Shown here piece after piece: positions 15,698 through 57,076 of a stretch of 64,000 nt of DNA; positions within the stretch are counted from its first letter, which is position 1, and every line of letters begins with the position of its first letter. Location: the IMG/VR virus record IMGVR_UViG_3300042540_001822, positions 155,476 through 219,475 of that record. One strand, written 5' to 3'. Below the pieces are notes generated by a model. The model had not been told where the DNA came from. It saw nothing but the letters and a program-made list of their open reading frames with translations, and searched no databases. The translations under genes were made by a program, and so were the position numbers.

Positions 15698-16108
15698 TTA
15701 TCTATTCTTACTGCTCATTTTCCGGTACAACTTGTATTCTGGTGTTTCCTCAATGGAATCTAATTCGAATCTCTGGAAATTTCCGAACCTCATAGGTCCA
15801 TTTAAATTAAACCTTTTGTGTGGTTCGACTGAATCCTCGTAAAATTGACAAATTTGCTCGTGATATTCGGAATCTTTTTCAATAAAATATTCTTCTGGGT
15901 TGTGATAGTAGTCAAAAAGATACTCTGCCCATTCGGAGGGATTCTTTCCTCCTCCAAATTGTTCGACAAATTTTTCCATTTGGATTTCTTCATCCGTCAT
16001 GCTTATACCCAAATTTTGGAAACCTGAAATCAAATCATCTAGATCTGACCCAATATCATTATTTTCATTCAAAATTGAGAACACCCAAAAGGATTTTAAA
16101 TTATTCAT
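15698..16108 (-). CDS. Hypothetical protein with CTS-like N-terminus
   Basis: MNNLKSFWVFSILNEN. Confidence 0.55.
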   Translation of the reverse strand: MNNLKSFWVFSILNENNDIGSDLDDLISGFQNLGISMTDEEIQMEKFVEQFGGGKNPSEWAEYLFDYYHNPEEYFIEKDSEYHEQICQFYEDSVEPHKRFNLNGPMRFGNFQRFELDSIEETPEYKLYRKMSSKNR

Positions 16109-16115
16109 GATAAAT

Positions 16116-16123
16116 TATATATC
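16116..16123 (-). promoter_or_regulatory. GATATATA late-promoter-like motif
   Basis: Exact motif just upstream of start 16108. Confidence 0.55.
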
Positions 16124-16138
16124 CATTTTTTTGCCCAC

Positions 16139-16169
16139 AAAAAACCCGACCTGAATTGGGTCGGGTTTT
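16139..16169 (-). terminator. Intrinsic terminator
   Basis: 11-bp stem aaaacccgacc/ggtcgggtttt, 7-nt loop, U-run on minus strand. Confidence 0.75.
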
Positions 16170-21313: not shown

Positions 21314-21988
21314 TTAATTGGTTTTCTTTGTGATTACCCCATCGATGATTCCATAGGCCTTGGCTTCCTCGGCATCGAGCCAAAAATCACGGGTTGCGTC
21401 CTCCTGAACCTTTGCCGGATCCTTACCACAAAAATCACCAAGTAGTTCAAATAGGATTTTATTCACCTTTTCCCATTCTTGAAAGTCAATTTTTGCGTCC
21501 TGGATGTTTCCTTCGAAGCCTCCAGAAGATTGGTGCAACATCACCTTAGAGAAGCGAAGAGAAAATCTTTTTCCCTTGGTCCCAGCACCTAATAGCACAG
21601 ATCCCATAGAAGCTGCCATGCCCGTGTTGATTGTGGAGATGTCAGATTTAATGTACTGCATGACATCCACCATTGAAAGTCCAGATTTAACCGATCCCCC
21701 TGGTGAATCGATGTGCATTGTGATGTCCCTTTCATCAACGGAATCTAAAAACATCAGCTGTGCCTGAACTACTGTCGACATGGAATCACGGACCGGACCT
21801 GCCACCCATAAAATTCTGTCCATCATGAGTCTTGAAAAAATGTCCAATTGTGTCACCCGAAGTTCTCTTTCTTCTAGAATGTAGGGGGTTAGTGAGCTTT
21901 GAACTTGTTTTTCATAGTAGTCCAAAGTGGAGGAACTAATTCCTTGAGATAGGGAGAATTTTTGAAATTCCGAAAAAAGTTTTGACAT
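21314..21988 (-). CDS. clpP: ATP-dependent Clp protease proteolytic subunit
   Basis: DIFSRLMMDRI, IDSPGGSV, AASMG (Ser), MLHQ (His), RDFWLDAEEAKAYGIID. Confidence 0.95.
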   Translation of the reverse strand: MSKLFSEFQKFSLSQGISSSTLDYYEKQVQSSLTPYILEERELRVTQLDIFSRLMMDRILWVAGPVRDSMSTVVQAQLMFLDSVDERDITMHIDSPGGSVKSGLSMVDVMQYIKSDISTINTGMAASMGSVLLGAGTKGKRFSLRFSKVMLHQSSGGFEGNIQDAKIDFQEWEKVNKILFELLGDFCGKDPAKVQEDATRDFWLDAEEAKAYGIIDGVITKKTN

Positions 21989-22825: not shown

Positions 22826-23146
22826 TCAATAAACAATAGTTTGTGTCATATCTGGATTTGTTCTGTAAATTACCTCGGGACCAGGTGACATGATAACTGA
22901 AAGTTCATCTGACAGTGTTTGCAAACTTTGGATAAAATTTTGAACGTCGTCTTTTTTGGAAGCGGGAAAATTAAAATGAGTCATAACATCATTAGTCAGG
23001 GACTCAATAGAATCATCAAATTGCCCGGCATCATGAAAATCCATGTCCTTTTCATATTTTGAAACGAAGTCTTTGATTTCGTCCTGTTCTACCTGTGACA
23101 AAGAAAGATTCGACACAAAATCATCAAATTCTAGAATTCTTTTCAT
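22826..23146 (-). CDS. Hypothetical protein with CTS-like N-terminus
   Basis: MKRILEFDDFVS. Confidence 0.6.
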   Translation of the reverse strand: MKRILEFDDFVSNLSLSQVEQDEIKDFVSKYEKDMDFHDAGQFDDSIESLTNDVMTHFNFPASKKDDVQNFIQSLQTLSDELSVIMSPGPEVIYRTNPDMTQTIVY

Positions 23147-23194: not shown

Positions 23195-23641
23195 ATGGAA
23201 AAACATGATAAGGATAAAGATTTCTTGATCCAAGATTCGACAGAAGAATTTGAAACAACTGATTTGGATTCAAATGATGAATTCACCCTTGAAGAGGAGG
23301 ATTTTGACGAAGAGCCAGCAGAAGATATCGTAATTCAACCCCAAGAAGATAAAGACGAGGATGAAGATGATGATGATGAGGAAGATGATGACGAAGATCA
23401 GAAATCATCTGACACCGAAGATGAAATTTCCATGCAATATTACATGGATGATGAACCAGGAAAACCGGAGTTTAAAAAATCTAATAAAGAAGAAGATGAT
23501 GGGGAAGATGATGAGGATGATGAAGATGAATATATTTCTTTAAGTCACTCAGGGGAAGAACACAAAACCCCACAGAAATCCTCAAAAGGAACAAAGATAC
23601 TTTCATTTGAAGATTTTGTAGATGGTCTGGACGAGGATTAA
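23195..23641 (+). CDS. Extremely acidic low-complexity protein
   Basis: Long D/E tracts; C-terminal KILSFEDFVDG. Confidence 0.65.
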   Translation: MEKHDKDKDFLIQDSTEEFETTDLDSNDEFTLEEEDFDEEPAEDIVIQPQEDKDEDEDDDDEEDDDEDQKSSDTEDEISMQYYMDDEPGKPEFKKSNKEEDDGEDDEDDEDEYISLSHSGEEHKTPQKSSKGTKILSFEDFVDGLDED

Positions 23642-23833: not shown

Positions 23834-25306
23834 TTAAATTGATTCGAATTTTATACCTCCATGAGGCATTCCTTTTGTTTTAAGTGGTCTGTAACCTTTC
23901 ATTTCGTCTGTAACTACGAATGCCTTATGAGGATTAACCATTACCCCCATTCTTTTCATTAAACCTCTATTTGCCAAAAAAGGAGTGCTTTTTTGAATTC
24001 TGTCAGTAGGTGCAACCTTAACATCGGAAATTTTAACTCCATTGAGCATCAAATCCAATGATATAATAGGTCTTTTTTCTTTTTCCCTTCCAATTTCAGT
24101 GTTTGTGTAACCTATAATTTCATCTGCGAAAGTATTTTCACCTATTTTCCAATATAGAACTCCATTTTTTTCCTCCAATTCATCAGCGTGAATCGAAGAG
24201 GCTGAAGATCCATTACCAGTGTCAAATTTTGCCACCATTTTACCAATTCTGGGAATATCTAAAGTTTCTAAATAGCCAACCTCCATTTTGCTATAGCTCC
24301 AATTATTCTTGTCTATAACATAGTCAATAACATCTCCAACAATAGGTCTTCCAATTGCCTGAGAAATACCTTCTGTTCCAGGAGAAGAATTGACCTCCAA
24401 AATGTAGGGTTTACCCGATTCAGCATCAATCATGATGTCTACTCCACACCAGTGGCTTCCGACTGCATTAGCGGCTTCACAAGCGAGAGCTGCTGTTTCT
24501 TCGTCGATATCATAGGATGAAACCTGCCCTCCCAAAGAGTAATTAGTTCTAAAGTCTTTTTCAACAGCTTCTCTTTTCATGGAACCGAGAATGGTGTAAT
24601 TTCCTTTTTTTGAAATAAGTGGATCGAATCTTTTAACGATTACCTGAATTCTAAGATCAAAATTAGAATTAATCTTTTCTTGTATCAAAATTTCCTTTTC
24701 CGGGTCTAGCTTTGCTATGGTCTGATAAACCGACTTTAAAGAAGCATAAGAATCAACAATCGAAACTCCAATTCCCTGGGTCCCAGACAGTAATTTCATA
24801 ACGACAGGAAATTTACCTCCAATCTGCTCCAAAGCGGAATCTAGATTGTCTTCCCCGTTGACTAATGCGTATCTAGGAACGGGTAAACCCTCACCCTCCA
24901 AAATCCGGGAGGTAAGAAATTTGCTTTCACAAATCTCAATTGATTCTAAAGAGTTAACGCAAAAATATCTAGATGCCTCCAAATCTCTCATGATTTGTTT
25001 GGTGTAGGAGTTGGTAATAACTCCTCTCCGAGGAATAATTGCAGTTTTATCTGGTTTAATTAGAATTTCTTTGCCATCTTTTTTTCCTTCACGAACCATG
25101 TGTCCGTTGTAAATTTTTTCCAACGTTATGTTGTTTATGTCCACCACGTTGCAGACGATTCCCCGATTTTCACACTCGGCCATAAAAGATTTAGAGGTAG
25201 GGCTGGGTTTGGCGGTACCGGACAGGATAAGAATTTCTACCCCATCTGAGGACTCGGATTCATTCAAGAAGGTTGAAAAATTAACAACAGAAGGAGCAAA
25301 GGACAT
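23834..25306 (-). CDS. rimK: RimK-family ATP-grasp ligase fused to retropepsin-like (RimB/Zn_protease) domain
   Basis: CESKFLT..L...GLPVPR, PVVMKLLSGTQGIGV, IQEKI..FDLR, FRTNYSLGG, GVDI, LEVNSSPG; C-terminal KFDTGNG; start at MSFAPS. Confidence 0.85.
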   Translation of the reverse strand: MSFAPSVVNFSTFLNESESSDGVEILILSGTAKPSPTSKSFMAECENRGIVCNVVDINNITLEKIYNGHMVREGKKDGKEILIKPDKTAIIPRRGVITNSYTKQIMRDLEASRYFCVNSLESIEICESKFLTSRILEGEGLPVPRYALVNGEDNLDSALEQIGGKFPVVMKLLSGTQGIGVSIVDSYASLKSVYQTIAKLDPEKEILIQEKINSNFDLRIQVIVKRFDPLISKKGNYTILGSMKREAVEKDFRTNYSLGGQVSSYDIDEETAALACEAANAVGSHWCGVDIMIDAESGKPYILEVNSSPGTEGISQAIGRPIVGDVIDYVIDKNNWSYSKMEVGYLETLDIPRIGKMVAKFDTGNGSSASSIHADELEEKNGVLYWKIGENTFADEIIGYTNTEIGREKEKRPIISLDLMLNGVKISDVKVAPTDRIQKSTPFLANRGLMKRMGVMVNPHKAFVVTDEMKGYRPLKTKGMPHGGIKFESI

Positions 25307-29902: not shown

Positions 29903-31042
29903 TTAAGAGGTAGACTTATCGCCCTCGCCTTTAATTGCAGAAGCCAGAACAGGAGCTGGAACATCGTCCATTTCTACCAAAACAAAGTCAATTTGATTCT
30001 GGTTTTCCTTCCTCATTTCTTGAAGAACTTTTTGTAAATCGGTTGCATTTTTGAAAACGATACATCCAGCTGAATACCAACCTATTTCTTCTGTGGTGCC
30101 TGTTTTATTTCCTCTGTGAATGTTGATTCCATAATTTCCAGTTTCCGCATTTCCAGGAGAAAAGGTGGTGAACTTGGCCTTATTCACATCATCGACAATT
30201 GGGAATCTTTCTACCTTTACAGGTCCAGCCTGTACCAAAGCATCATAATCATTATGTTTACCAATTTTGTAAGGATATACCCCTGGCCGTAAAATTGCCA
30301 ATCCATCTGGATTAAGAGCTTCTTTGCTTTTGGCGAACCAATAATTTCTCAATTTAGAAATTAGAAAACTAGCACCTGGAACCGTGGTTCCTTGCATGAT
30401 GGACAAAGATTTTTCATTTTCTGGACTCATCAAAATCAAAGCATCAATAAATCTATTGGGATAATTCTTTTTAACCGAAAGGTAATTTCTAAGACCAACC
30501 AGGTTATATTTTTTAAAGTTCATTTCCCTGGCCAAACCTTTTTTTTCTAAAATGTATTTTAATCCTTCCCAAGACAAATCTTTAACGTCGTCAAATTTGT
30601 AATCTCCAGATTTTAATTCTTTGAAAATTTCTTTTGTTTCAGCCTCATCTGCAGTGGAAACCCCGGCAGAATTTAAAGCCTCAATGTCTTTTTCGGTTGT
30701 ATCTTTAGAATTAGAAGATTGATCACCGGATGTCCAATCCTGAGGGAGAATCCCCTTTTTTTTCAAAGCATCGAGTAATTCTTTATTTTCGTCCTTATGG
30801 AATTCCCCGGCAATTTTTTTGCCAATTTCGGTTCCATAAAAAAGGTCTGCAACGGAGATCGAGCTTTTACCCAGAGAGGTTGATTTGGACGTACTAGAAC
30901 TATCCTCAGATGAAGATTTTGTTTCTTTTGTTGCTTGTTTTAAAATAGATTCACTGGAATCTTCCTGAATTTTGGTGTAGCTATTAGAATTCAGAATAAC
31001 GAAAAATTCAGAAAATTTCAAAATGTTTTGTGACACAGACAA
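29903..31042 (-). CDS. Putative L,D-transpeptidase-fold peptidoglycan enzyme with CTS-like N-terminus
   Basis: GINIHRG...WYSAGC; N-terminal ILKFSEF; S/T-rich linker. Confidence 0.55.
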   Translation of the reverse strand: MSVSQNILKFSEFFVILNSNSYTKIQEDSSESILKQATKETKSSSEDSSSTSKSTSLGKSSISVADLFYGTEIGKKIAGEFHKDENKELLDALKKKGILPQDWTSGDQSSNSKDTTEKDIEALNSAGVSTADEAETKEIFKELKSGDYKFDDVKDLSWEGLKYILEKKGLAREMNFKKYNLVGLRNYLSVKKNYPNRFIDALILMSPENEKSLSIMQGTTVPGASFLISKLRNYWFAKSKEALNPDGLAILRPGVYPYKIGKHNDYDALVQAGPVKVERFPIVDDVNKAKFTTFSPGNAETGNYGINIHRGNKTGTTEEIGWYSAGCIVFKNATDLQKVLQEMRKENQNQIDFVLVEMDDVPAPVLASAIKGEGDKSTS

Positions 31043-35918: not shown

Positions 35919-36473
35919 TTAGGAATTAGAAGGTTTGTAAAAAATTTCTTCCACCTTCATAGGGGCAATTGGTGCTTCAAAACCTTTCTTTTCTAAAGAG
36001 GCTGGAGTCCCTATAATATACTCTTTGGATCCGATTTTTTCAATCCTCTTTACAATAAATTCAGAATCAAAAAAGATGGTTCTTTGGTTGCCGAATCTAT
36101 CGATGTCAAAATCAAAATCTTTTGAATTTGGATCGATTTCTTTTCCTGTTTTTGCCTTGTAGGCCAAAGCAACTCTTTGTCTTTCTTTTTGAATTATATC
36201 TTGTATGTACTGTGGTGTACCCTTTCCCTGTGTCGGGACATCTGCTACGACAGTTATCTTTTTAATTTCTCCAGATTTTTGAAGTTCCAATAATTTTTGT
36301 AAGGTAGAAATAACCTCTGAATATTTGATGTTCTGATCAGGAGACGCTTTTACATCCGCCATAAACTTTACCTCATTGTAAACCGGAATAACCGAATAGG
36401 AACTTTGAGGTTCTTTTCTGACTTCCATAATTGGTTTTTTGGAGAAGTTTTCAAACAATTGTAAATGCTTCAT
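35919..36473 (-). CDS. Hypothetical protein with CTS-like N-terminus
   Basis: MKHLQLFENFSKKPIME; GAATATATAA at 36497-36506. Confidence 0.6.
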   Translation of the reverse strand: MKHLQLFENFSKKPIMEVRKEPQSSYSVIPVYNEVKFMADVKASPDQNIKYSEVISTLQKLLELQKSGEIKKITVVADVPTQGKGTPQYIQDIIQKERQRVALAYKAKTGKEIDPNSKDFDFDIDRFGNQRTIFFDSEFIVKRIEKIGSKEYIIGTPASLEKKGFEAPIAPMKVEEIFYKPSNS

Positions 36474-37383: not shown

Positions 37384-38334
37384 TTAAAACAAACCCAGCT
37401 CGTCAAATCCGGAAAACAGTTCGAAATCATCTTCATATCCTTTAGGAATCTTAATTGCAGATTGCATGTCCTTTGGCATGTGATTCCATGCAGTGGCCAA
37501 TAGATGAACTGTTTTCCCCGGATCACGTTGGAGTTCCTGGTTCCACCAGTCCGGTCCTAGCCATGGGAGGGTGAGAATCAATTTTTGGGCTGATGGTGTT
37601 CCTGTGTTCAGAACCTCGACCCATCCTTCCATGTTCCATTTGCCTGAATCTAATTGGAATTCGTCACACCGAAAACTCCTACCCACCGTCTGAGGTGCTC
37701 CTTCGAGGGAGGTCAGTTGGTTGCCGCCACAGTAGAATCCCCGGCCCAATTCCTGAGGTGCTCCGACCAGAGATTGGAGTTGGTTGACGTCACACCGAAA
37801 ATCCCCATTTACCGTCTGAGGTGCTCCTTCCAGGGATTGGAGTTGGTTGTCGATACACCAAAAATCCCCATCTACCGTCTGAGGTGCTCCTTCCAGGGAT
37901 TGGAGTTTGTTGTGGGAACACCGAAAATCCCCATTTACCGTCTGAGGTGCTCCTTCCAGGGATTGGAGTTGGTTGTCGATACACCAAAAATCCCCATCTA
38001 CCGTCTGAGGTGCTCCTTCCAGGGATTGGAGTTTGTTGTGGGAACAATCAAAAAACCCCCCCACCGTCTGGGGTGCTCCTGCCAGGGAGGTCAGCCGGTT
38101 GGAGCCACAGGAGAAATTCCCACTCACATGTCCGAACGAGATGCCCGGGAAAGACTCCAGTCTTTTGGCACTACAGTCAAAATCACCCTGAACGTCCACC
38201 AAACCTGTTGTTGGATTAACAGACCAGGTTCCAGTTGTGTATTTGTTTAAGAATTTCTCCTGCTTCTTGGTGAGACTTGAAGGAAGAAGAACCACTTTAG
38301 CTTCGAAAAGTACAAACGGTTGGATGTGTTTCAT
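37384..38334 (-). CDS. 21-aa leucine-rich-repeat-like (SLEGAP) protein, paralog 2
   Basis: About seven repeats; start at MKHIQPFVLFE. Confidence 0.8.
   Translation of the reverse strand: MKHIQPFVLFEAKVVLLPSSLTKKQEKFLNKYTTGTWSVNPTTGLVDVQGDFDCSAKRLESFPGISFGHVSGNFSCGSNRLTSLAGAPQTVGGFFDCSHNKLQSLEGAPQTVDGDFWCIDNQLQSLEGAPQTVNGDFRCSHNKLQSLEGAPQTVDGDFWCIDNQLQSLEGAPQTVNGDFRCDVNQLQSLVGAPQELGRGFYCGGNQLTSLEGAPQTVGRSFRCDEFQLDSGKWNMEGWVEVLNTGTPSAQKLILTLPWLGPDWWNQELQRDPGKTVHLLATAWNHMPKDMQSAIKIPKGYEDDFELFSGFDELGLF
37792..38046. repeat. Perfect 126-bp tandem duplication (63-bp basic unit) inside LRR gene
   Basis: ccgtctgaggtgctccttccagggattggagtt at 37812, 37875, 37938, 38001; 37792-37917 equals 37918-38043. 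Confidence 0.9.
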
Positions 38335-38612: not shown

Positions 38613-39199
38613 CAGGGACTACTAGATTTAATTCCCAAAAGTTTTCGGTACCGTGCAACATTACAAGACCAATATCTAGGTTTCCATTTCGGCCCTGGAT
38701 TATCGCAATTATGCCTGGCTCTGAATGATTTCGATCTTTTAGGATCATCATTTCTTACCCTCATTCCGGGTTGGCCAAATCTAACCAAAACGACTTTTCC
38801 TGATTCATTCTTTGTATAGACCCCAAATTTTCTAGGACCTCCTGAAGTTCTGAAAGGTCGATTGAGATTTACCTTTCTTCCTTTATATTCTGCCTCGTAA
38901 AGGTCCTCCTCCAGAAAAGGAACGTCAAGCCAAACCTCTACTCCTTCGAAGAAATCTCTTCGGCCTAAATCTGACTGAAGAAAAAATAAATCATCTTCAC
39001 CGAAGTCTAACACATTATTTTCCCAAAGCTCTCTGGCTTCATTAATCATTTGAAACCACGATTCTGAACCAATTCTAAAAACACTTTCAGAAAGAGAAAG
39101 ATTGTTTTTCAAATGATAATCGAATTTTTCGAAATCGTATATGTTTCGGTTGTGGATTTCGTTGAATTCTCCCCACAATTCAAGGTTTAAGATTTGCAT
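38609..39199 (-). CDS. Conserved phage protein with basic C-terminal domain
   Basis: YKGRKVNLNRPFR..KFGVY..VRFG..KSFRARHNC..YWSC. Confidence 0.65.
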   Translation of the reverse strand: MQILNLELWGEFNEIHNRNIYDFEKFDYHLKNNLSLSESVFRIGSESWFQMINEARELWENNVLDFGEDDLFFLQSDLGRRDFFEGVEVWLDVPFLEEDLYEAEYKGRKVNLNRPFRTSGGPRKFGVYTKNESGKVVLVRFGQPGMRVRNDDPKRSKSFRARHNCDNPGPKWKPRYWSCNVARYRKLLGIKSSSPW

Positions 39200-42067: not shown

Positions 42068-42730
42068 TTATTGTGTATTAGAATCAGTTTTGGGTTTATC
42101 CGATTTACTTTTCCGTAGGTCTAACTGGTTCACAATTTTTTTGTACAGTCTATCTATCCCCACTCCAGAATCAAACTTTTTAAGCTTTCTGCTTTTTTGG
42201 TACAGTTCGATAAGAGGAGCAGTTTTTTCGGTGTACGTTTGAAATCTTTTTTTAATCACTTCTGGATCTTTATCATCTTCTCTATTTTCTTTTTCTGCTC
42301 TAGATAAAATCCTTTCTGTAGCGGTCTTTTCATCCAAATCCAAATAGATCGTATGACTTAAACCCAATCCCATTTTTCCGAGCAAAGAGTCTAACATTCC
42401 AGCCTGCTTTACAGTTCTAGGAAAACCATCAAAAATAATACCCATTCCAGGATCCAATTTTTTAAGTTCTTTTCTGAGCATCGATACCATCGTTTTATCA
42501 TCGATGTATTCCCCCTTGGCAATCTTTGCTTTCAATTCTGGTTCCTTCGAATTACGAATCAGATCTCCTGTAGAAATGTGATTGTAACCCTCTTTATCAG
42601 CGAGTCTTTTTGAGAAGGTCCCCTTCCCAGATCCAGGAGGACCCATGATAACTAAGATCTTTCCCTGAAAATCAGGAAGTTCTCTTTCTTGAAGATGAAT
42701 GAATTCGTCAAATTTCTTAACTGTGCTCAT
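42068..42730 (-). CDS. adk: Adenylate kinase (short LID) with CTS-like N-terminal extension
   Basis: GPPGSGKGT, HISTGDLIR, FDGFPRT, REDD, RFQTY; start [10 protein letters not shown]. Confidence 0.92.
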   Translation of the reverse strand: MSTVKKFDEFIHLQERELPDFQGKILVIMGPPGSGKGTFSKRLADKEGYNHISTGDLIRNSKEPELKAKIAKGEYIDDKTMVSMLRKELKKLDPGMGIIFDGFPRTVKQAGMLDSLLGKMGLGLSHTIYLDLDEKTATERILSRAEKENREDDKDPEVIKKRFQTYTEKTAPLIELYQKSRKLKKFDSGVGIDRLYKKIVNQLDLRKSKSDKPKTDSNTQ

Positions 42731-48442: not shown

Positions 48443-48769
48443 ATGTTGGACAATCTTAAAAGTTTCGGAAATTTTGTAACTGAAAACTGGAGCGCATTTG
48501 CTCCGGGAAGCGTAGCTGTGCCTGGAGAATGGTACAAGGACAATGTTAATTCCAGAAATTATCGTCCTGCCTACACCCAAATGCCTAGAGTTGTAGACGA
48601 TCTTTACAACACTACGGATTTATATTCTTATTTAGACGAGTTAGCAGAAGAAGAAGAATTTCAAAAAATGCTTACCAAAGATCACAAGAATTCCAAGAAG
48701 ATTTTAAAGTACGTGAAACAAAGAATTCACGAGACACTTTCAGGCAAGGCCAAAACAGAGTCTAAGTAG
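48443..48769 (+). CDS. Hypothetical protein with CTS-like N-terminus
   Basis: MLDNLKSFGNFVTEN. Confidence 0.6.
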   Translation: MLDNLKSFGNFVTENWSAFAPGSVAVPGEWYKDNVNSRNYRPAYTQMPRVVDDLYNTTDLYSYLDELAEEEEFQKMLTKDHKNSKKILKYVKQRIHETLSGKAKTESK

Positions 48770-49670: not shown

Positions 49671-50132
49671 TTATTTCTCCTGCAATTTTTTCATTGTTTT
49701 CACAAAATCAGAAAAATTCTGAATAGTTTTAGACCTTGTTTTTTTTCCTTTTTTGTCCTTTTGTGCTGATGGAGTTCCAACTGTCAGAGAGGTAAACTTA
49801 TCTCCAGATCCTTGTTTAGAAGCATCGTAAAAATTTGCATTTGTTCCTGGACCTGTTGGTGGTGTCACCGGTCCCATACCAGGGGTAGAATTTAAACTCG
49901 CCATTCCGCCTTCACTTTCTTCCATCTTGAATTTTGGATAACCACATTTTTGCATGTAATTTTCAACCTGCCAATTTTCTGTACAATATGAATTTTCCAC
50001 CATCCATTCACACAGAGATTCTAAAATTTCTTCGGCAGAATTTTTTTCGGATTCATAATAAGGAAGATCGTCACAACAGCATAAACAAACTACTGTGTGT
50101 CCTTGTGTGGTATTACCTGTTGGGAAAAACAT
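49671..50132 (-). CDS. Hypothetical protein
   Basis: Cys cluster CLCCCD; TPGMGPVTPP; C-terminal IQNFSDFV. Confidence 0.55.
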   Translation of the reverse strand: MFFPTGNTTQGHTVVCLCCCDDLPYYESEKNSAEEILESLCEWMVENSYCTENWQVENYMQKCGYPKFKMEESEGGMASLNSTPGMGPVTPPTGPGTNANFYDASKQGSGDKFTSLTVGTPSAQKDKKGKKTRSKTIQNFSDFVKTMKKLQEK

Positions 50133-50412: not shown

Positions 50413-50828
50413 TATCTGTAATCGTTTCTCAATTCTTTTCTTCTCAAATAATTGAAGAGATATTGTAAAGCCCTGTTATAATCCTTCAAAGTTTTAAAAG
50501 GTCTAGGAAATCTACGGATGTCGTTTCCTCCCCCTTGCGGGATTTCGTGAGATTTTTCTGGATTGTACCTTCTGACAATTCCACTTGGATGAACCGTGTA
50601 AAAAACATCTCCGTGACCTCTTTCTCTTTGTTTGTTTTTTGTTCTAACAAATTTCAAGGTATTATTTAATTCCTGCTGATGTGAATGATCCTCTTCAAAT
50701 CCTAAATCTATGATATTTCTATATGCTCCAGATTTTCTGATGTCATCCAAAGAAATATCCCTCCTGGTATCGGCTTTGTATTCTAACCTAGGATCATATT
50801 TTTTAAATTCCAACAGGTGATAGAGCAT
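50412..50828 (-). CDS. Hypothetical protein
   Basis: MLYHLLEFKKY start; basic 138 aa. Confidence 0.55.
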   Translation of the reverse strand: MLYHLLEFKKYDPRLEYKADTRRDISLDDIRKSGAYRNIIDLGFEEDHSHQQELNNTLKFVRTKNKQRERGHGDVFYTVHPSGIVRRYNPEKSHEIPQGGGNDIRRFPRPFKTLKDYNRALQYLFNYLRRKELRNDYR

Positions 50829-50831
50829 CGA

Positions 50832-51524
50832 TTAAGATTTTTTACTCGAAATATAATCACGGTAATCTGCCAAATGTGTCATTTTCTTTTTTCCTTTTGG
50901 CTTGGTTACCTCTGGATTCAAATGTGGAACGATAGGTTTAATACCACCTCCTACGTTCAAACCCGGAGTAAAAGTTGGCATTTTCTTCGAACCAATGATG
51001 GGAGAAGTTGCACCAGATACCGGAATCCCTTTCTCATCCAGTGATTCTGATTCTTCAACTTTTCCCGTCAACATTTCAATATCTTCTATTGATAAACCAT
51101 AATCATCGTTAAAATCTGTGAAGTAAACATGTCCATTCACATTTTGTCCAACTTCAGTTACTGTTAAAACGTCACCCTCTTGAAGATCTTCAAAACCTTT
51201 AGCAGGAGAATACCACTCGGGATAAGTTACATTCATAATTCGAATTTTATCGCCTGGTTTGTAATATTGGGTCTTCGATTTTGTTGAGTCTTCCTCGACT
51301 GCTTGATAATCGTCGTACTCGAAAGTTTCTTTTACGTAGTGTGGGAGTTTTCTGGTTTTGGTTGAAGCATACTTCTCCAACTCCTTGTTGGTCATCTCTC
51401 CATCGGCAATAGCCTTGATTTCTTTCCTATACTTTGAATCGATGTCTTTTAATTTAAGTTGACCCGACCTTAAAGCCCAAGCCTGGCCCATGAGAGATTG
51501 TTGTGCTTTTGAAACTGCTGGCAT
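50832..51524 (-). CDS. Protein with DUF3008-like N-terminus
   Basis: MPAVSKAQQSLMGQAWALRSG...ELEKYASTKTRKLP. Confidence 0.6.
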   Translation of the reverse strand: MPAVSKAQQSLMGQAWALRSGQLKLKDIDSKYRKEIKAIADGEMTNKELEKYASTKTRKLPHYVKETFEYDDYQAVEEDSTKSKTQYYKPGDKIRIMNVTYPEWYSPAKGFEDLQEGDVLTVTEVGQNVNGHVYFTDFNDDYGLSIEDIEMLTGKVEESESLDEKGIPVSGATSPIIGSKKMPTFTPGLNVGGGIKPIVPHLNPEVTKPKGKKKMTHLADYRDYISSKKS

Positions 51525-52760: not shown

Positions 52761-53294
52761 TTATCTGTTCCACAAATAAATCTTTTTGGAAGATCCATCT
52801 TGCATGTGCCAATCTTCTCCCAAAGCGAAAGAAAGCAATGATTTAGAATATGCTCCATAGTTCTTGATGTCCAAATTCAAATTCATCTCATCAACCATTC
52901 TAATGATTTTTGGATTTTTCTCCAAATAGCTGGAAATACACTTTCCGATTTGTTCGAACAATCTAGAAAGTTCACCACCGGATAGTTTAAAAGAAACTTT
53001 GTTTTTTTCTGGCAAACTTCCTTTATTAATCGCAATATCTTCTATGACTTCTGTTCCAATTTTGTTGATGTTCAAAACAGCGTATGAATTTTTGGGACCA
53101 TCCATAGACTCATATTGTGAATACTTTCCTATCATCAAACAGAATCCTTCGGGATCTTCTTTTTCTCTTTCCAATTGGAAAAAGTAATAATAAACATCAC
53201 CTTCTTTTTTAAGTAAAAATGGCATTGTTCCGAAGCCATCGGCCTCGTTCAACGTGTTTGACAGAAAATCTGTATAATTAAATAAATTTTTCAC
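52761..53294 (-). CDS. Hypothetical protein with CTS-like N-terminus
   Basis: (GTG)KNLFNYTDFLSNTLNEA. Confidence 0.6.
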   Translation of the reverse strand: MKNLFNYTDFLSNTLNEADGFGTMPFLLKKEGDVYYYFFQLEREKEDPEGFCLMIGKYSQYESMDGPKNSYAVLNINKIGTEVIEDIAINKGSLPEKNKVSFKLSGGELSRLFEQIGKCISSYLEKNPKIIRMVDEMNLNLDIKNYGAYSKSLLSFALGEDWHMQDGSSKKIYLWNR

Positions 53295-53319: not shown

Positions 53320-55232
53320 TAATTTTTCTTCAAGTCTGACACCAAACCAGAATACAAATTAAGTACCGACTTTGGCAGCATCTTTTTCAAGGATGCATAA
53401 TCTTCTTCTTCCAATTTAGATCTTACCTCTGTGGCAGAGGTGCTTCTAGGCGTTTCAACCAATTTAAAGTCTTCCGGCAATTTATCGAACAACTCCGTTT
53501 TTTTAATGTAATCCATCTGCTTGTCATAATCGTCTTGTCGATCTTCACCAGCTCCGACGAGATGTGGCTCGAATCCCATCTCCACCAATTTGTTCACTGC
53601 AGATCCCAACAGACCCCGTGGAACGATCATGTAGTCCTTTAAAACATCTCCGTGTTCTTTTACCACAGCATCCATATACTGCTTTATTGTTGTTTCCCCA
53701 AATGGAGATTTTCCACTCTTATTGTGTCCAGGATAAACAACAACCACAAAAGAAGGTAATTTATTTTCCTCGTGTAACTTTTTGGCCATCTTTAAATGTC
53801 CCAAATGAAAAGGTTGAAAACGCCCCATGATGACATTGATCTTTTTGTCTTCTTCCTTTTCAACCAATGGTTCTTCTTCATCAGAAGATTGCTGGTCTAT
53901 ACTTTCTAATTTAGAAATAAAATCATCGAAAGAAAGTAAAGGATTTTCGTTCTTTTCTGTATCCTCGCTTTCTTCCAACACATATTTCACATTAGGCTTT
54001 GAATCTTTTTGAAAATCCAAAAAGCTAACAAATTCGGATTCATTGACTTCTTTTTCTGGACGTTCGATATGATCTTTAATTTCTTGGATTAGCAAATTCA
54101 GCTGGGCCAGAGTTCCAGATGTGACTATTCCAGAAGCACGGGTTTTTAGTTTTCTGAAAGAATTTAACAGAAGTTTGTACAGTGACTCGAAGGCTTCGTC
54201 TTCTTCAACAAATTTTGCCACTCTACGATCCCTGACCAAATCCCTATTTAATCTGAATTCTGGCTTTTTTAGATATTCTGGTTCTTCAAAATCTGCTCCT
54301 CTGTATTTCTCGGCATTTTCCTCCAAAAATTTAGCAAACACGTCAGAAATAAATGAAATATACCTTTCGTCTTCTCCTTCTCCTTCTACCTCAAAAGAAT
54401 CTACACCCTGCTGTAGGATAAAATTCATTACGTCTAACAGGGTAATTCCAAGAAAATCAGAAGGCTTTTTATCCCTCTTTTCTTGATATTTTGTTTTGGC
54501 TAAATCAGTGAACAAAGGATCAACCATCTTTGCCAGAACCGTTTCATTCTCTGAATTTGGTTCTCCGAATCTGAATACTACACCTTCTACATCTTTATCT
54601 AGATCATCGTTCAGAGCGCTGGATTTCAATTCTGGATTTAAAACAGAAATGATAAATCTAACAAAACTTTGGGTTTGGAATCTCGAAACTAGCTGCTGAA
54701 ATGGAGTTGCCAAAAATTCGGTCAACTGCTCTTTTTGTGTTTCGTCCAGATAGCCTTGGAAAATAATAGGGCTTCTTTCCACTCCCAATAAATCTGCCCA
54801 CGTGTCCAATTTTTCTTTCTGCTGAATTGTTTTGGCGATCTTTCCTTGTAAATCCATTTTATGGACGAACGAAAGTATCAAGTGATTCTTAGGAATTCTG
54901 TCGTAAACAATTTCAACAGGCTTAGTGTTGGCAAAATATTCCAATCCAAATCTCCAACCTCTTGGAATTTTTTCTAAAATGTCAGGAGGCAAGGATTCAA
55001 TGTACTGAATTGGCTTTTCGTAATACTTCATCAAAGTCCTGTCAACCAATGTGATTGGATTTCTTTGGTCTCTCCTATAAAAATTGAACTTACCAGTTTC
55101 TAAATCCCTCTCAAAAGAAAAGGCAGATCCATCCATCTTTTCATTGATGGTAACAAATTGAGAAAAAAGAGATTGAATGAAATCCGCCCCTTTCTTATTA
55201 TACATATCGTATAGGTGGTTGATACCTGCCAT
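53319..55232 (-). CDS. RNA-ligase-like covalent nucleotidyltransferase fused to HxGH cytidylyltransferase/NMNAT-like domain
   Basis: EKMDGS (motif I), GLEYF (III), EGVVFR (IV), AKMVD (V); C-terminal GRFQPFHLGH and TSATEVR. Confidence 0.75.
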   Translation of the reverse strand: MAGINHLYDMYNKKGADFIQSLFSQFVTINEKMDGSAFSFERDLETGKFNFYRRDQRNPITLVDRTLMKYYEKPIQYIESLPPDILEKIPRGWRFGLEYFANTKPVEIVYDRIPKNHLILSFVHKMDLQGKIAKTIQQKEKLDTWADLLGVERSPIIFQGYLDETQKEQLTEFLATPFQQLVSRFQTQSFVRFIISVLNPELKSSALNDDLDKDVEGVVFRFGEPNSENETVLAKMVDPLFTDLAKTKYQEKRDKKPSDFLGITLLDVMNFILQQGVDSFEVEGEGEDERYISFISDVFAKFLEENAEKYRGADFEEPEYLKKPEFRLNRDLVRDRRVAKFVEEDEAFESLYKLLLNSFRKLKTRASGIVTSGTLAQLNLLIQEIKDHIERPEKEVNESEFVSFLDFQKDSKPNVKYVLEESEDTEKNENPLLSFDDFISKLESIDQQSSDEEEPLVEKEEDKKINVIMGRFQPFHLGHLKMAKKLHEENKLPSFVVVVYPGHNKSGKSPFGETTIKQYMDAVVKEHGDVLKDYMIVPRGLLGSAVNKLVEMGFEPHLVGAGEDRQDDYDKQMDYIKKTELFDKLPEDFKLVETPRSTSATEVRSKLEEEDYASLKKMLPKSVLNLYSGLVSDLKKN

Positions 55233-55239
55233 GACTTAT

Positions 55240-55719
55240 TTATTTGTGTGTGAAATCTTTTTTGAATGTGAAGATCCCATATGCTTTTTCCATTTCTTTG
55301 TTCAAATCTTCAACCAGATCCATATGAATGACTTGACTAATTCCTTCTATAATTTTTCTAACAAAAATTTTGGACTTTAACTGTAGAGGGGAATTCCAAG
55401 CCAAAATAAGTTTAGGAAGATAAATTTGAATTCCAGGGGGATCAAAATTTTCGAAATCAATAAGTTCGAAAACCCTTTTTTCCACCGTGTAAACTAACTC
55501 GTTATTCAATAATATTTTTCTGTCTCCGTGTTTTGTTTTTATAATTAAACCGGAAGAACCATTTTCAGTTTTAAATAAAACCAGCTTTCCATCTCTGACA
55601 ACTGCCTGTGGGGAATTACCGTCAAGAAAAAAATCCAAGGCTGTGTATAAGGGATCAAACATCATCGGACAAAGAATTTTGTTTAGTTTGTACCTCTGAA
55701 GGGATTGGCAATTTAGCAC
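55240..55719 (-). CDS. Hypothetical protein
   Basis: ORF; true start likely MMFDPLY. Confidence 0.5.
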   Translation of the reverse strand: MLNCQSLQRYKLNKILCPMMFDPLYTALDFFLDGNSPQAVVRDGKLVLFKTENGSSGLIIKTKHGDRKILLNNELVYTVEKRVFELIDFENFDPPGIQIYLPKLILAWNSPLQLKSKIFVRKIIEGISQVIHMDLVEDLNKEMEKAYGIFTFKKDFTHK

Positions 55720-56593
55720 GTTCTAAATATCTGGCAAAGTCTTCCACAATATCTAACATTTTATCATTATAAATGTAACTAGGTGAAGTAACTAAAGACC
55801 AGGCATCTTCAAATGTTTTCACTTGATTTGGATCAATCCCTGGACCAAACATAAGTTCTACTGCCTCTTGTGGATCGTTGGTGACAAATTGGACTGTTCC
55901 TTCTATGGTTTGTGGTCTAGAAAGTCTGTTCTTTCTTATTCCACGGTAGGATTTTTTGGATTTAAAAATTCCTTCACTTAATCTCAAAACATAGCCTTCA
56001 TAATCCATGATTTTCCCCTCTTCATCAAGACTTTCTACCTCTTTTAAAGAAGAAAGAATAGCCTGAAAAAGCCAATTCCGATGGGCAGATTTGTACACAG
56101 ATTCGTCAAGACGATAATCCGGAGAGTAATAAATAAATCTTGCCCAATCCATATTGGAAAGAGGAATAAGATCCAACTGAACAATTCCTTGAGATGGATC
56201 TCCTCCGATTGGCCAACCGATTGAAAGTACTCCTAAACCCTTCATGAGCTTCATGTCGGGTTCAAATCCAAGGATTTCAGGCAATTCAGTAGACAATAAC
56301 TGTTCCAAATCCGTCAAGACAGTTTCGGGGCTGGAACCCAATTGATCCATCAGATACTCTTTGGAAATCCCCAAATCGATGTCACCAGAATCGTCCGTTG
56401 GGTTTTTCTTTTTTCCAATGCTTCCGATTAGCAAAAAATCCTCGTCAAAATTACCACCGCCCAAAATAGAAAACAGATTTGATTCTATGTGTTCCAATGT
56501 GGACTGTGCTTCATCCTCCCTTATTCTACGGGAGGTTTTTATGGCGGCCCCGCCTTCATTTAATCTCATAAATTGGTTGAAATTAGCAATCAT
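55655..56593 (-). CDS. Pol-beta-superfamily nucleotidyltransferase with CTS-like N-terminus
   Basis: LIGSIGKK...SGDIDLG, third acidic residue in VQLDL; MIANFNQFMRLNE. Confidence 0.7.
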   Translation of the reverse strand: MIANFNQFMRLNEGGAAIKTSRRIREDEAQSTLEHIESNLFSILGGGNFDEDFLLIGSIGKKKNPTDDSGDIDLGISKEYLMDQLGSSPETVLTDLEQLLSTELPEILGFEPDMKLMKGLGVLSIGWPIGGDPSQGIVQLDLIPLSNMDWARFIYYSPDYRLDESVYKSAHRNWLFQAILSSLKEVESLDEEGKIMDYEGYVLRLSEGIFKSKKSYRGIRKNRLSRPQTIEGTVQFVTNDPQEAVELMFGPGIDPNQVKTFEDAWSLVTSPSYIYNDKMLDIVEDFARYLERAKLPIPSEVQTKQNSLSDDV

Positions 56594-57076
56594 TTAATCT
56601 AAATCAAAATATTTTCTAGAACGTCTTAAATAATCTCGATATTTTCTTTGATCTTCAGTTTTAGGTTTTTCCACATCGAAATCAGAACCGAAAGTTTTTT
56701 TACCAGAATACAAAGATCTTGTGTAAAAATCTTCATAATCTTTTTCTTTGTTTTTTCCACTTTTCTGAATACTTTCTCCCCATCTGCTAAAAACCTCTTC
56801 TTCATCTTTTGATCCCTTTGGAAGTTTACTTCCAATTGCTCCGAAAATTGCCTTACCAGCTTTAGAGATACCAATCCCAGCTGCTCCTAAAAGTCTTCCT
56901 AGAGCTCCTCCTGGATCTTCTGCCATGGCTTTAGCCCAGCTCGAATAACCTCTCCAATTTTCTCCTTCTATTTCAGGAACTCTAGATCTTATTCTTGCCT
57001 CTAGTTCTTCCCACTTTTTTTTTGCAATATTTTCATTCAAAGAATTAAATTCATCAAATTTTAAAACTGAGGACAT
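56594..57076 (-). CDS. Hypothetical protein with CTS-like N-terminus
   Basis: MSSVLKFDEFNSLNEN. Confidence 0.6.
   Translation of the reverse strand: MSSVLKFDEFNSLNENIAKKKWEELEARIRSRVPEIEGENWRGYSSWAKAMAEDPGGALGRLLGAAGIGISKAGKAIFGAIGSKLPKGSKDEEEVFSRWGESIQKSGKNKEKDYEDFYTRSLYSGKKTFGSDFDVEKPKTEDQRKYRDYLRRSRKYFDLD

What the first reader, a model, noticed from the sequence alone, without database searches (positions are those of the whole stretch)
15698..57076. Dispersed capsid-targeting-like motif marks a large predicted virion-packaged (injected) proteome that includes enzymes
Seen: unrelated ORFs begin with a hydrophobic-x-x-[FY]-x-x-[FY] segment, usually followed by [LIVM]-x-E. Examples: MNNLKSFWVFSILNE (15698), MKRILEFDDF (22826), VVNFSTFLNE (RimK), ILKFSEF (29903), MKHLQLFENFSKKPIME (35919), MRHLIPFRIYE and MKHIQPFVLFE (LRR pair, looser match), [12 protein letters not shown] (Adk), NLKSFGNFVTE (48443), NLFNYTDFLSNTLNE (52761), IANFNQFMRLNE (NTase), VLKFDEFNSLNE (56594). 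The same core is C-terminal or internal in 3963, 23195, 49671, 50832 and twice in 53319. Most of the N-terminal examples have a GATATATA-type motif directly upstream. Established: T4 internal proteins carry the N-terminal capsid-targeting sequence MKTYQEFIAE, removed by gp21 protease after [IL]-x-E, and are injected with the DNA. Inference: this phage appends a portable targeting tag to ~15-19 cargoes (RimK ligase/protease, adenylate kinase, nucleotidyltransferases, LRR proteins, peptidoglycan enzyme, acidic protein), far more than T4, and delivers them before any phage transcription.
Basis: partly seen in the sequence, partly recalled or inferred. Interest (0 to 1): 0.85.

Follow-up and report, generated by a model that had tools for sequence, protein, structure and literature searches.

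The report
Capsid-loading tags on phage cargo proteins
In a large uncultured T4-related phage, about twenty unrelated proteins (including adenylate kinase and a RimK-type ligase) carry a short removable tag like the one phage T4 uses to load proteins into its head, so the proteins shipped with the DNA can probably be predicted from sequence alone.

Summary
In the window, 15 of 84 proteins have hydrophobic-x-x-[FYW]-x-x-[FYW] within residues 2-14, against 2.2 expected. Thirteen of these follow it with [LIVM]-x-E.

Across more than 300 related metagenomic loci the tag is all-or-none per protein family. It stays in place while the spacer and the rest of the protein diverge. Conservation of the mature protein begins exactly after the Glu.

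The tag is an add-on:
- Cellular adenylate kinases start at phage residue 25.
- A Lak-megaphage homologue of the nucleotidyltransferase starts at the predicted cleavage point.
- Fused versions keep tag plus site at the domain junction.

Replication, tail and baseplate families lack the tag. Relatives, including one contig that also carries the tagged genes, encode T4-type portal, major capsid protein gp23 and an S77 (gp21-family) prohead protease. The protease is fused to a scaffold-like part packed with [LIVM]-x-E sites, and six or more small tagged proteins surround it. GATATATA marks the head genes and the tagged genes alike, so it looks like a late promoter. T4's own three internal proteins fit the same pattern.

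Best reading: an expanded T4-type capsid-targeting system, a new variant of a known kind. Packaging, cleavage and injection are inferred, not shown.

The parts
16064..16108 (-). N-terminal tag MNNLKSFWVFSILNE of gene 15698-16108 (136 aa, unknown function)
   Evidence: The one relative found also has a tag plus L-T-E. GATATATA lies at 16116-16123.
23117..23146 (-). N-terminal core MKRILEFDDF of gene 22826-23146 (106 aa)
   Evidence: ILEFDDF / LKEFDDF is kept in 57 relatives. Many of the relatives have L-S/T-E a few residues later; the window copy has L-S-Q.
25259..25306 (-). N-terminal tag MSFAPSVVNFSTFLNE of the RimK-type ATP-grasp / Zn-protease-like protein 23834-25306 (490 aa)
   Evidence: Pfam RimK 2.9e-32. 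JGI start at Met12. All full-length relatives listed keep xLNFxxF[LI]NE followed by a conserved mature start. GATATATA lies at 25330-25337.
30962..31036 (-). N-terminal tag (..ILKFSEF..KIQE) of gene 29903-31036, which has a C-terminal endolysin-like domain
   Evidence: PHROG endolysin 1.2e-6. Relatives are tagged, e.g. IFNFREF..VLNE. GATATATA lies at 31069-31076.
36423..36473 (-). N-terminal tag MKHLQLFENFSKKPIME of gene 35919-36473 (184 aa)
   Evidence: The tag family is 100% tagged. Upstream lies the variant GAATATATA.
37337..37369 (-). N-terminal tag MRHLIPFRIYE of repeat protein 36497-37369 (290 aa)
   Evidence: Paralogues and orthologues keep xHLQSFSLFE. GATATATA at 37374-37381 lies only 4 nt from the ATG.
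38302..38334 (-). N-terminal tag MKHIQPFVLFE of repeat protein 37384-38334 (316 aa)
   Evidence: JGI start.. GATATATA lies at 38340-38347.
39158..39199 (-). N-terminal tag (ILNLELWGEFNE) of gene 38609-39199 (196 aa).
   Evidence: Relatives have MKILNFGEF..ISE and MRIKGFSDF..LSE. GATATATA lies at 39204-39211.
42686..42730 (-). N-terminal tag [15 protein letters not shown] of adenylate kinase 42068-42730 (220 aa)
   Evidence: Pfam ADK 1.5e-35. JGI start. All 5 distinct orthologues are tagged and then read RE[LI]PD..GPPGSGKG. Solved bacterial Adk residue 2 aligns to phage residue 25.
48443..48484 (+). N-terminal tag MLDNLKSFGNFVTE of + strand gene 48443-48769 (108 aa)
   Evidence: 93% of its 15 relatives are tagged, typically VKSFENFLNE. 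GATATATA lies at 48430-48437.
53244..53294 (-). N-terminal tag (GTG start) ..LFNYTDFLSNTLNE of gene 52761-53294 (177 aa)
   Evidence: Of 36 relatives, 97% are tagged. The spacer varies from 2 to 12 residues, and an invariant E-x-DGFGT follows. AlphaFold gives low confidence for residues 1-24. Fused forms keep the tag at the junction. GATATATA lies at 53312-53319.
56555..56593 (-). N-terminal tag MIANFNQFMRLNE of the Pol-beta-like nucleotidyltransferase 55655-56593 (312 aa)
   Evidence: Of 42 relatives, 95% are tagged. E13-G14-G15 are invariant. pLDDT is below 50 for residues 1-15 and 89.5 overall. The Lak-A2 homologue starts at the predicted mature end.
57032..57076 (-). N-terminal tag MSSVLKFDEFNSLNE of gene 56594-57076 (160 aa)
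   Evidence: Of 42 relatives, 93% are tagged. GATATATA lies at 57095-57102.
50796..50828 (-). N-terminal core only (LLEFKKY) of gene 50412-50828 (138 aa); no clear [LIVM]-x-E follows
   Evidence: The relatives listed (14 of 44 hits) keep [FY]-x-x-Y-D-P..E.
21956..21988 (-). Possible degenerate core (LFSEFQKF) on the roughly 40-residue N-terminal extension of ClpP 21314-21988
   Evidence: Pfam CLP_protease starts at residue 47. Relatives keep EFxK[FY] but have no cleavage motif before the ClpP fold. Uncertain member.
23597..23617 (+). C-terminal copy ILSFEDF of the acidic protein 23195-23641 (148 aa)
   Evidence: KILSFEDFVxG is invariant in 6 relatives while the acidic body varies. GATATATA lies at 23162-23169.
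49704..49724 (-). C-terminal copy IQNFSDF of basic protein 49671-50132 (153 aa)
   Evidence: 96% of 27 distinct relatives keep the core in the last 22 residues, after a poly-Lys run.
50853..50873 (-). C-terminal copy LADYRDY of the DUF3008 protein 50832-51536
   Evidence: LKDYRDW[IL] is conserved in the relatives listed, again after a poly-Lys run.
3996..4016 (-). C-terminal copy LMGFEDF of the 58-aa protein 3963-4139 (unverified)
   Evidence: Only identical copies from the same strain were available.
53898..54041 (-). Two internal copies in the linker of 53319-55232, between the RNA-ligase-like and cytidylyltransferase-like domains
   Evidence: The first copy follows V-N-E (VNE|SxF[IV]SFxEF). 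The second reads SYxEFIxKLE. The second copy is conserved in all 15 relatives examined and the first in 12 of them. Domains.
16116..16123 (-). GATATATA late-promoter-like motif. This is one of 17 copies. The others are at 4547, 18589(+), 23162(+), 25330, 31069, 37374, 38340, 39204, 46962, 48430(+), 50405, 52424, 53312, 57095, 61471 and 62626.
   Evidence: 17 found against 1.6 expected. In relatives the same motif precedes portal-region, protease, tail-fibre and tube genes.

Best explanation
The motif is a T4-type capsid-targeting propeptide used on an unusually large scale.

Proposed mechanism:
1. Late in infection, a GATATATA-type late promoter drives both the head genes and a dispersed set of cargo genes.
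2. Each cargo carries a 10-25-residue amphipathic tag: Met, 2-5 residues, hydrophobic-x-x-F-x-x-F.
3. The tag docks the protein onto the assembling prohead core or scaffold.
4. The gp21-family (S77) prohead protease then cuts after the [L/I/M/V]-x-E that follows the tag. This releases the mature protein inside the head.
5. The protein leaves with the DNA at the next infection.

C-terminal and internal copies of the same core do the docking without being removed, or they serve as junctions of polyproteins that are cut apart.

Shown here: the tag, its portability, its family-specific conservation, the cleavage-type signature, the shared promoter motif, the same tag on proteins of the head module, and a T4-type protease, capsid protein and portal in the family.

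Inferred: docking, cleavage, retention in the virion, and injection.
For: Enrichment. 15 of 84 N-termini against 2.2 expected.

All-or-none by family. Tagging is bimodal across 2563 distinct proteins. An internal control window scores about 0 in the tagged families.

Two-part architecture. The spacer between core and site is variable. Predicted P3 is L 50%, I 31%, M 11%, V 8%, and P1' is a small residue. This matches the T4 gp21 rule of cleavage after Glu (PMC5694885).

Conservation begins at the predicted cut. E13-G14-G15 are invariant in the NTase family and E-x-DGFGT in the 52761 family.

Add-on nature. Shown by the Lak-A2 homologue, the Adk alignment, and the fused 867- and 871-aa proteins that keep tag plus I-L-E|SDGFGT at the junction.

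Structure. AlphaFold leaves the tag as a detached, low-confidence short helix.

Head module in relatives. It contains Peptidase_S77 next to Gp23, with Portal_T4 nearby. His and Ser align with T4 gp21. The protease's C-terminal part has 28 [LIVM]xE sites against 11.7 expected, as would be expected of a scaffold that is chopped up. Six or more small tagged families surround the protease and capsid genes.

Shared promoter motif. GATATATA precedes 10 of 16 tagged families against 9 of 66 untagged ones, P = 1.6e-4. Those 9 untagged families include the 878-aa protein upstream of the protease (a possible portal), the protease, a tail fibre and the tube.

T4 comparison. T4 ipI, ipII and ipIII fit the same pattern. 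According to the literature, T4 internal proteins and Alt use 10-20-residue targeting propeptides removed by gp21 (PMC5694885, PMC3012670).
Against: - No virion proteomics exists, and no cultured relative carries the tag. Flavobacterium phage MaF61 has none in the 78 ORFs of its first 50 kb, the only part examined.
- The head module was not recovered on the window's own contig. The evidence is from relatives and from a co-occurring contig of the same sample.
- A position-weight matrix built from this family does not rank T4's internal proteins at the top of the T4 proteome, because the register differs: the first aromatic is residue 4 in T4 and residues 6-8 here.
- C-terminal targeting tags are not known for T4.
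- It is not obvious why a phage would package adenylate kinase.
- ClpP and 50412 lack a clear cleavage site.
Confidence: 0.75

Rival explanations
1. The tag does bring proteins to the prohead core and is cut there, but the tagged enzymes are not delivery cargo. Either they are assembly or core components that are degraded or expelled, or the propeptide keeps them inactive until late (zymogen-like control). In both cases nothing functional is injected.
For: Several tagged families sit inside the head module and look scaffold-like (coiled-coil, acidic). In T4, gp22, gp67 and gp68 are cut into fragments that leave the head (PMC5694885). Adk and a RimK-type ligase are odd things to inject.
Against: T4 proteins that carry the targeting sequence (internal proteins, Alt) stay in the head and are ejected (PMC5694885, PMC3012670). 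In the tagged enzymes the single predicted cut lies exactly before a well-folded domain. That arrangement preserves the protein rather than destroying it.
Confidence: 0.13
2. The motif is a short linear motif that binds some other hub, unrelated to the capsid. Candidates are the sliding clamp, a chaperone (the phage encodes DnaJ, Hsp20 and ClpP), or a nucleotide-synthesis complex.
For: The motif works at N-termini, C-termini and internally. The C-terminal copies flanked by basic residues resemble clamp-binding tails. About half of the primase family carries a similar C-terminal core. Host Adk is part of the T4 dNTP-synthesis complex (own knowledge).
Against: The family's polymerase tail is a different conserved motif, NLFMINxLF. 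T4's clamp tails read [ST]LDFL[FLY]. Replication and nucleotide-metabolism families (RNR, topoisomerase, gp32, clamp, helicase) are untagged. A hub-binding motif would not need the conserved [LIVM]-x-E, and it would not predict the tag's concentration around the protease and capsid genes or the shared late-type promoter.
Confidence: 0.08
3. The conserved N-termini reflect a constraint on the messenger RNA: efficient translation of leaderless or near-leaderless late transcripts from AT-rich codons. They would not then be a protein signal.
For: GATATATA lies only 4-8 nt from the ATG in six genes. The tag is rich in residues with AT-rich codons (K, N, F, I, D, E).
Against: Synonymous codons vary at the conserved positions. 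Tagged genes with 17-34 nt leaders carry the same tag. The 878-aa protein upstream of the protease (93% of its copies) and the protease (76%) have the same GATATATA upstream but no tag. The same core occurs at C-termini, in linkers and at fusion junctions.
Confidence: 0.03

Closest known systems
Phage T4 capsid-targeting sequence on internal proteins IPI-III and Alt, removed by the gp21 prohead protease
   Same: A short N-terminal peptide sits on unrelated proteins. It has an aromatic-x-x-aromatic core followed by [L/I]-x-E. The T4 database sequences fit the same pattern. The system is paired with an S77 protease, a gp23 capsid protein, a T4-type portal and a TATA-like late promoter motif with no -35 element.
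   Different: At least 13 cleavable N-terminal families lie in 64 kb, plus at least 6 more in the head module. For T4 the source read names only a few: the internal proteins, Alt and gp24 (PMC5694885). The tag here is longer, with the first aromatic at residues 6-8 and a variable spacer. Copies also occur at C-termini and internally. Cargo includes housekeeping-type enzymes (Adk, RimK-type ligase) and a Pol-beta-like NTase. The protease is fused to the scaffold-like part.
Propeptides of ejection proteins in giant phages phiKZ, 201phi2-1 and SPN3US
   Same: Many head-internal proteins, enzymes among them, are processed by a gp21-related protease that cuts after Glu (PMC5694885).
   Different: In those phages P3 is small (A/S/G-x-E), the propeptides are mostly longer than 100 residues, and they are not a portable consensus tag. 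Here P3 is L/I/M/V and the tag is 10-25 residues with a clear consensus.
Encapsulin cargo-loading peptides
   Same: A short terminal peptide, at either end of the protein, directs unrelated enzymes into a shell with the HK97 fold (own knowledge).
   Different: Encapsulin peptides bind the shell protein directly and are not cleaved. There is no sequence relation, and no DNA or ejection is involved.
Phage P1 Dar system and 'polyvalent' virion-packaged proteins
   Same: Anti-defence or host-modifying proteins are loaded into the head and injected (PMC5512222).
   Different: Loading in P1 depends on an ordered protein-protein hierarchy, not on a shared cleavable tag.

Membership tests
T4-type capsid-targeting propeptide system | A short (10-20 aa) peptide at the extreme N-terminus of otherwise unrelated proteins | tested here: met
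   15 of 84 window proteins against 2.2 expected. The first aromatic is mostly at residues 6-8. Tagging is all-or-none by family.
T4-type capsid-targeting propeptide system | The peptide ends at a gp21-type site (L/I-x-E, cut after Glu) | tested here: met
   Predicted P3 is L 50%, I 31%, M 11%, V 8%. Conservation of the mature protein starts at P1'. This is sequence evidence only.
T4-type capsid-targeting propeptide system | The phage encodes a gp21-family (Peptidase S77) prohead protease with catalytic His and Ser, next to a gp23-type capsid gene | tested here: inconclusive
   Met in relatives. These include a 230-kb contig that also carries the tagged genes and a contig of the same sample that co-occurs with window-identical contigs in the four assemblies checked (3300042540, 3300042482, ERZ27271709, SRR27420217). 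His/Ser shown. Not recovered on the window's own contig.
T4-type capsid-targeting propeptide system | Sequence resemblance to T4's own targeting peptides | tested here: met
   ipI, ipII and ipIII from AF158101 match M-x-x-[FY]-x-x-F followed by I-x-E. The register differs, so a family matrix does not rank them first.
T4-type capsid-targeting propeptide system | Cargo genes are expressed late, together with head genes | tested here: inconclusive
   GATATATA is shared by the 878-aa gene upstream of the protease (a possible portal), protease, fibre and tube genes and by 10 of 16 tagged families. No expression data exist.
T4-type capsid-targeting propeptide system | The tag is sufficient to load a foreign protein into proheads and is then removed | not testable with these tools
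   Needs a reconstituted assembly system or a cultured host.
T4-type capsid-targeting propeptide system | Mature cargo is present in virions and ejected with the DNA | not testable with these tools
   No isolate exists. Viral-fraction metaproteomics would be needed.
Sliding-clamp-binding tail (T4 [ST]LDFL[FLY] type) | The same motif is present on the polymerase and other clamp clients | tested here: not met
   The family's polymerase ends in NLFMINxLF. T4 tails were read from the database. Replication families are untagged.
phiKZ-like long propeptides | A small residue at P3 (A/S/G-x-E) and propeptides longer than 100 aa | tested here: not met
   By the way sites were picked (first [LIVMF]-x-E after the core), P3 is L/I/M/V and never F; small residues at P3 were not scored. 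The tag is 10-25 aa. Literature values from PMC5694885.

The most novel reading that the evidence does not exclude
The core hydrophobic-x-x-F-x-[D/E]-F peptide is a position-independent 'address label' for the phage head. It works at N-termini (where it is then cleaved off), at C-termini, and at polyprotein junctions. If so, the complete injected proteome of a widespread, uncultured family of 220-370-kb phages can be read from sequence. That proteome would include housekeeping-type enzymes never before seen as virion cargo: adenylate kinase, a RimK-type protein ligase, a Pol-beta-like nucleotidyltransferase, an RNA-ligase/cytidylyltransferase, an acidic possible DNA mimic, and histone-like basic proteins.
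Probability: 0.45. Interest if true: 0.8.

Novelty: new variant of a known kind. Interest (0 to 1): 0.62.

Why it matters
Proteins that phages inject with their DNA act before any phage gene is expressed, and they include key anti-defence and host-takeover factors. At present they are found only by mass spectrometry of cultured phages.

A recognisable, cleavable address tag would allow them to be predicted directly from metagenomes for a large family of uncultured phages. At least 183 IMG/VR contigs carry this family's capsid gene.

The predicted cargo list is unusual. It contains metabolic and protein-modifying enzymes and a peptidoglycan hydrolase, and it gives concrete candidates for new counter-defence functions.

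The tag could also serve as a tool for loading foreign proteins into capsids, as the T4 tag already does.

The result also shows that gene callers can drop the tag: the 52761 gene was called 23 residues short.

Tried and rejected
- Nearest cultured relatives. There is no near match in the phage collection. Topoisomerase II is only 30% identical to T4-likes. Flavobacterium phage MaF61 shares a few distant genes but has no tag in the 78 ORFs of its first 50 kb, the only part examined, so it was dropped.
- Family matrix against T4. A matrix built from this family and scanned over the T4 proteome did not single out T4's internal proteins, because the register differs. A register-free pattern did recover them.
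- Walking to the head genes. One look-up was wasted on a short contig. The look-up for a gene near the right end of the window returned only contigs that stop at or just beyond a repeat-rich gene there. The walk therefore went through relatives: fibres, sheath and tube, baseplate, then head.
- Head module on the window's own contig. The window's contig was not among the 80 capsid-gene loci kept out of 183. An attempt to link the co-occurring head-module contig to the 231-kb contig of the window strain failed.
- Function of cargo proteins. PHROGs, Pfam and PDB sequence searches were mostly empty. The fold search for the 52761 family gave nothing meaningful.
- False members removed. Hsp20 and the N-terminus of 53319 were examined as possible members and rejected: the conserved residues there belong to the fold.
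- Clamp-binding motif. Considered and rejected.
- Nucleotide-level motif. Considered and rejected.
- Capsid protein N-terminus. It matches the pattern (AEIFDTW..IIE), but it aligns with T4 gp23's own propeptide. It was therefore not counted as a tag.

Full report
WHAT THE WINDOW IS

The window is the last 64 kb of a 219,475-bp viral contig, IMGVR_UViG_3300042540_001822. Almost all genes lie on the minus strand.

The gene content is that of a distant T4-like phage:
- gp32, UvsW-type helicase, a UvsY-sized protein and a gp61-type primase
- topoisomerase II in two subunits, only 30% identical to T4-likes
- sliding clamp, ribonucleotide reductase, and a family-B DNA polymerase split into two distant genes

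No cultured close relative exists in the phage collection.

More than 300 related loci were fetched from IMG/VR and JGI metagenomes. The helicase in them is 69-96% identical and the RimK-type protein 60-97% identical. The contigs reach 220-370 kb.

Gene starts for RimK, Adk and the second repeat protein were taken from independent JGI gene calls. With those starts, 15 of 84 window proteins carry [LIVMFA]xx[FYW]xx[FYW] within residues 2-14. Shuffles give 2.2 +/- 1.5, with a maximum of 9 in 5000. Thirteen of the 15 are followed by [LIVM]-x-E. Codon choice varies at the conserved positions, so the signal is in the protein.

GATATATA occurs 17 times against 1.6 expected. It sits 4-34 nt upstream of start codons, including most of the tagged genes.

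COMPARATIVE EVIDENCE

Orthologues keep the tag while everything else drifts.
- NTase family: the N-terminus varies (for example MIANFNQFMRLNE..VLNFSGFAILLE..LMDFVKFSRIFE), but E-G-G-A-A-I-K that follows is invariant.
- 52761 family: the spacer between the core and the site ranges from 2 to 12 residues. It always ends in [LIVM]-x-E followed by x-DGFGT.
- All five distinct Adk orthologues are tagged and then read RE[LI]PD..GPPGSGKG.
- All full-length RimK relatives listed are tagged.

I clustered 2563 distinct proteins from the loci fetched up to that point (about 210 loci). The result is bimodal. Sixteen families are 65-100% tagged, and nearly all others are 0-10% tagged. An internal control window scores about zero in the tagged families.

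Untagged families include portal-region, protease, sheath, tube, gp32, primase, UvsY, UvsW, RNR, topoisomerase, both polymerase parts and the clamp.

Predicted P3 is L or I in 81% of cases, and P1' is small.

THE TAG IS AN ADD-ON

- Solved bacterial adenylate kinases begin at phage residue 25.
- The Lak-A2 megaphage homologue of the NTase begins M-SGMAIKGS, which is at the predicted mature end.
- In two relatives the 53319-type and 52761-type proteins are fused. The junction keeps the core plus I-L-E|SDGFGT.
- AlphaFold models built from family alignments are confident for the domains (mean pLDDT 89.5 and 80.9). They leave residues 1-15 (NTase model) and 1-24 (52761 model) as a detached short helix plus a disordered linker.

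C-TERMINAL AND INTERNAL COPIES ARE REAL

- KILSFEDFVxG is invariant at the C-terminus of the otherwise variable acidic protein 23195.
- The 49671 and 50832 families keep the core after a poly-Lys run.
- The linker of 53319 keeps up to two copies (the second in all 15 relatives examined, the first in 12). The first of them follows V-N-E.

These copies have no downstream cleavage motif.

THE HEAD MODULE

I walked through relatives from the helicase side: tail fibres, then sheath and tube (phrog_45), then baseplate (gp13, gp25-like). This reached a locus that holds, in order:
- an 833-aa protein
- a 676-aa protein with Pfam Peptidase_S77
- a 573-aa protein with Pfam Gp23

The same module lies at about 51-55 kb of IMGVR_UViG_3300044974_001280. 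That contig also holds the tagged cluster beside the helicase at 123 kb (L016) and the tagged Adk and repeat genes beside topoisomerase II at 150 kb (L096). At least 15 contigs carry both capsid and helicase relatives.

The protease aligns with T4 gp21 (PDB 5JBL, E = 0.003). It has His in GELDHP and Ser in SSR at the positions of T4's GELNH and SRG. Its C-terminal 456 residues contain 28 [LIVM]xE sites against 11.7 expected (P < 0.001), which looks like a scaffold built to be chopped up.

At least six small families around these genes carry the tag, for example VLDFSSYFLTE, MIKKFDSFRLNE, MLLNFKQWESQNLNE and MIKKFSEFR..ELNE.

GATATATA precedes the 878-aa protein upstream of the protease (93% of copies), the protease (76%), a 1643-aa fibre (100%), the tube (52%), and 10 of 16 tagged families against 9 of 66 untagged ones (P = 1.6e-4). 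GATATATA therefore behaves like a late promoter. It has no -35 element, like T4's TATAAATA (the T4 comparison is from my own knowledge).

LINK TO THE WINDOW'S OWN GENOME

The window's contig ends in a repeat-rich gene, and contigs from several other assemblies stop at or just beyond the same gene.

A second contig of the same sample, _001929 (112.7 kb), carries the head module (L154: protease 677 aa, Gp23 575 aa, tagged neighbours). The head module of that contig type, with two Portal_T4 genes upstream, was also recovered from other assemblies.

Its distance from the capsid gene to the contig end is 62.5 kb. Adding the window's 5.4 kb from helicase to contig end gives close to the 69.8 kb separating the capsid gene and the helicase in the 230-kb relative.

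A look-up with a gene from its left end found head-module contigs in assemblies that also hold window-identical contigs (3300042482, ERZ27271709, SRR27420217); the contig itself comes from the window's own sample, 3300042540.

This points to one genome of about 334 kb, but that is inference, not proof.

COMPARISON WITH T4

I read T4's proteins from the database record AF158101. A register-free pattern, M-x(1-8)-[FYW]xx[FY]-x(0-12)-[LIVMF]xE, hits 13 of 313 T4 ORFs. All three internal-protein genes are among the hits.

The literature states three things (PMC5694885 and PMC3012670):
- T4 internal proteins and Alt enter the prohead core through a 10-20-residue capsid-targeting sequence.
- gp21 removes that sequence by cutting after Glu.
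- The tag can carry foreign proteins into the head.

The full-text literature searches run (three queries) turned up no description of such a tag in metagenomic or huge phages.

RIVALS

- A clamp-binding tail is excluded. The family's polymerase ends in NLFMINxLF and T4's clamp tails read [ST]LDFL[FLY].
- An mRNA-level explanation fails on codon variation, on tag-less genes that carry the same promoter motif, and on the C-terminal, internal and junction copies.
- The main live alternative is that some tagged proteins are core or assembly components, or late-activated proenzymes, rather than injected cargo.

VERDICT

This is a new variant of a known kind: the T4 capsid-targeting principle, expanded in number of users, in position within the protein, and in type of cargo. 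Packaging, cleavage and injection still need experiments.

Noticed in passing
window 20433-20872 (-) and 18889-18974 (-): The phage encodes a tmRNA (Rfam RF00023, 67 bits; ARAGORN predicts a tag peptide that, as far as I recall, lacks the usual tmRNA tag ending) and a tRNA-Ser (UGA anticodon).
   Followed up: partly
window 47009-48412 (-) and 26419-27585 (-): The family-B DNA polymerase is split into two genes 20 kb apart: an exonuclease/N-terminal part of 467 aa, and a C-terminal part carrying YGDTDS. The C-terminal part ends in a conserved NLFMINxLF, probably the clamp-binding tail.
   Followed up: partly
window about 5000-19900 and 2833-3894: A large sugar/glycan-modification cluster is present: two DegT-type aminotransferases, a PglD-like acetyltransferase, GNAT, several methyltransferases and glycosyltransferases, PhyH and a cupin. 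A glutamine synthetase gene is also present.
   Followed up: no
window 21314-21988, 31402-32439, 49197-49553, 22496-22780: The phage carries its own ClpP, DnaJ, Hsp20 and thioredoxin. The ClpP has a roughly 40-residue N-terminal extension with a conserved EFxK[FY].
   Followed up: partly
L143 6104-8134; L154 7936-9969: The S77 prohead protease is fused to a roughly 450-residue E/K-rich part that holds 28 [LIVM]xE sites against 11.7 expected. This looks like a protease-scaffold fusion.
   Followed up: yes
L232 2459-4084 and 4087-5694: Two tandem Portal_T4 (PF07230) paralogues of 541 and 535 aa lie upstream of the head module. They are in addition to an 880-aa protein directly before the protease.
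   Followed up: no
window 63406-64000 and beyond: A Pro/Asp/Glu-rich repeat gene sits at the contig end, and contigs from several other assemblies stop at or just beyond it. Contig IMGVR_UViG_3300042540_001929 (112.7 kb, carrying the head module) fits by distance as the continuation, which implies a genome of about 334 kb.
   Followed up: partly
window 52761-53294 (-): On the window's own contig the JGI gene call starts this gene 23 codons late (154 aa against 177 aa, GTG start), so it drops the tag. Automatic annotation can therefore hide these tags.
   Followed up: yes
window 37374-37381, 38340-38347, 39204-39211, 48430-48437, 16116-16123, 4547-4554: GATATATA lies only 4-8 nt from the ATG. 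If it is a -10-type promoter element, these late messages would be leaderless or nearly so.
   Followed up: no
window 52501-52677 (-), 50832-51536 (-), 51529-52128 (-): A histone-H1-like Hc1 protein (58 aa) and small DUF3008 and DUF5661 proteins sit in the middle of the tagged gene cluster at 49.6-57.1 kb. They could be DNA-associated head proteins.
   Followed up: no
L025 12988-15591; L073 11404-14019: In two relatives the RNA-ligase/cytidylyltransferase protein and the 52761-type protein are fused into one protein of 867 or 871 aa. The tag and cleavage motif are retained at the junction.
   Followed up: yes
L126 6034-6999 (Prevotella phage Lak-A2): Lak megaphages encode a homologue of the tagged NTase (26-27% identity) that has no tag.
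   Followed up: partly
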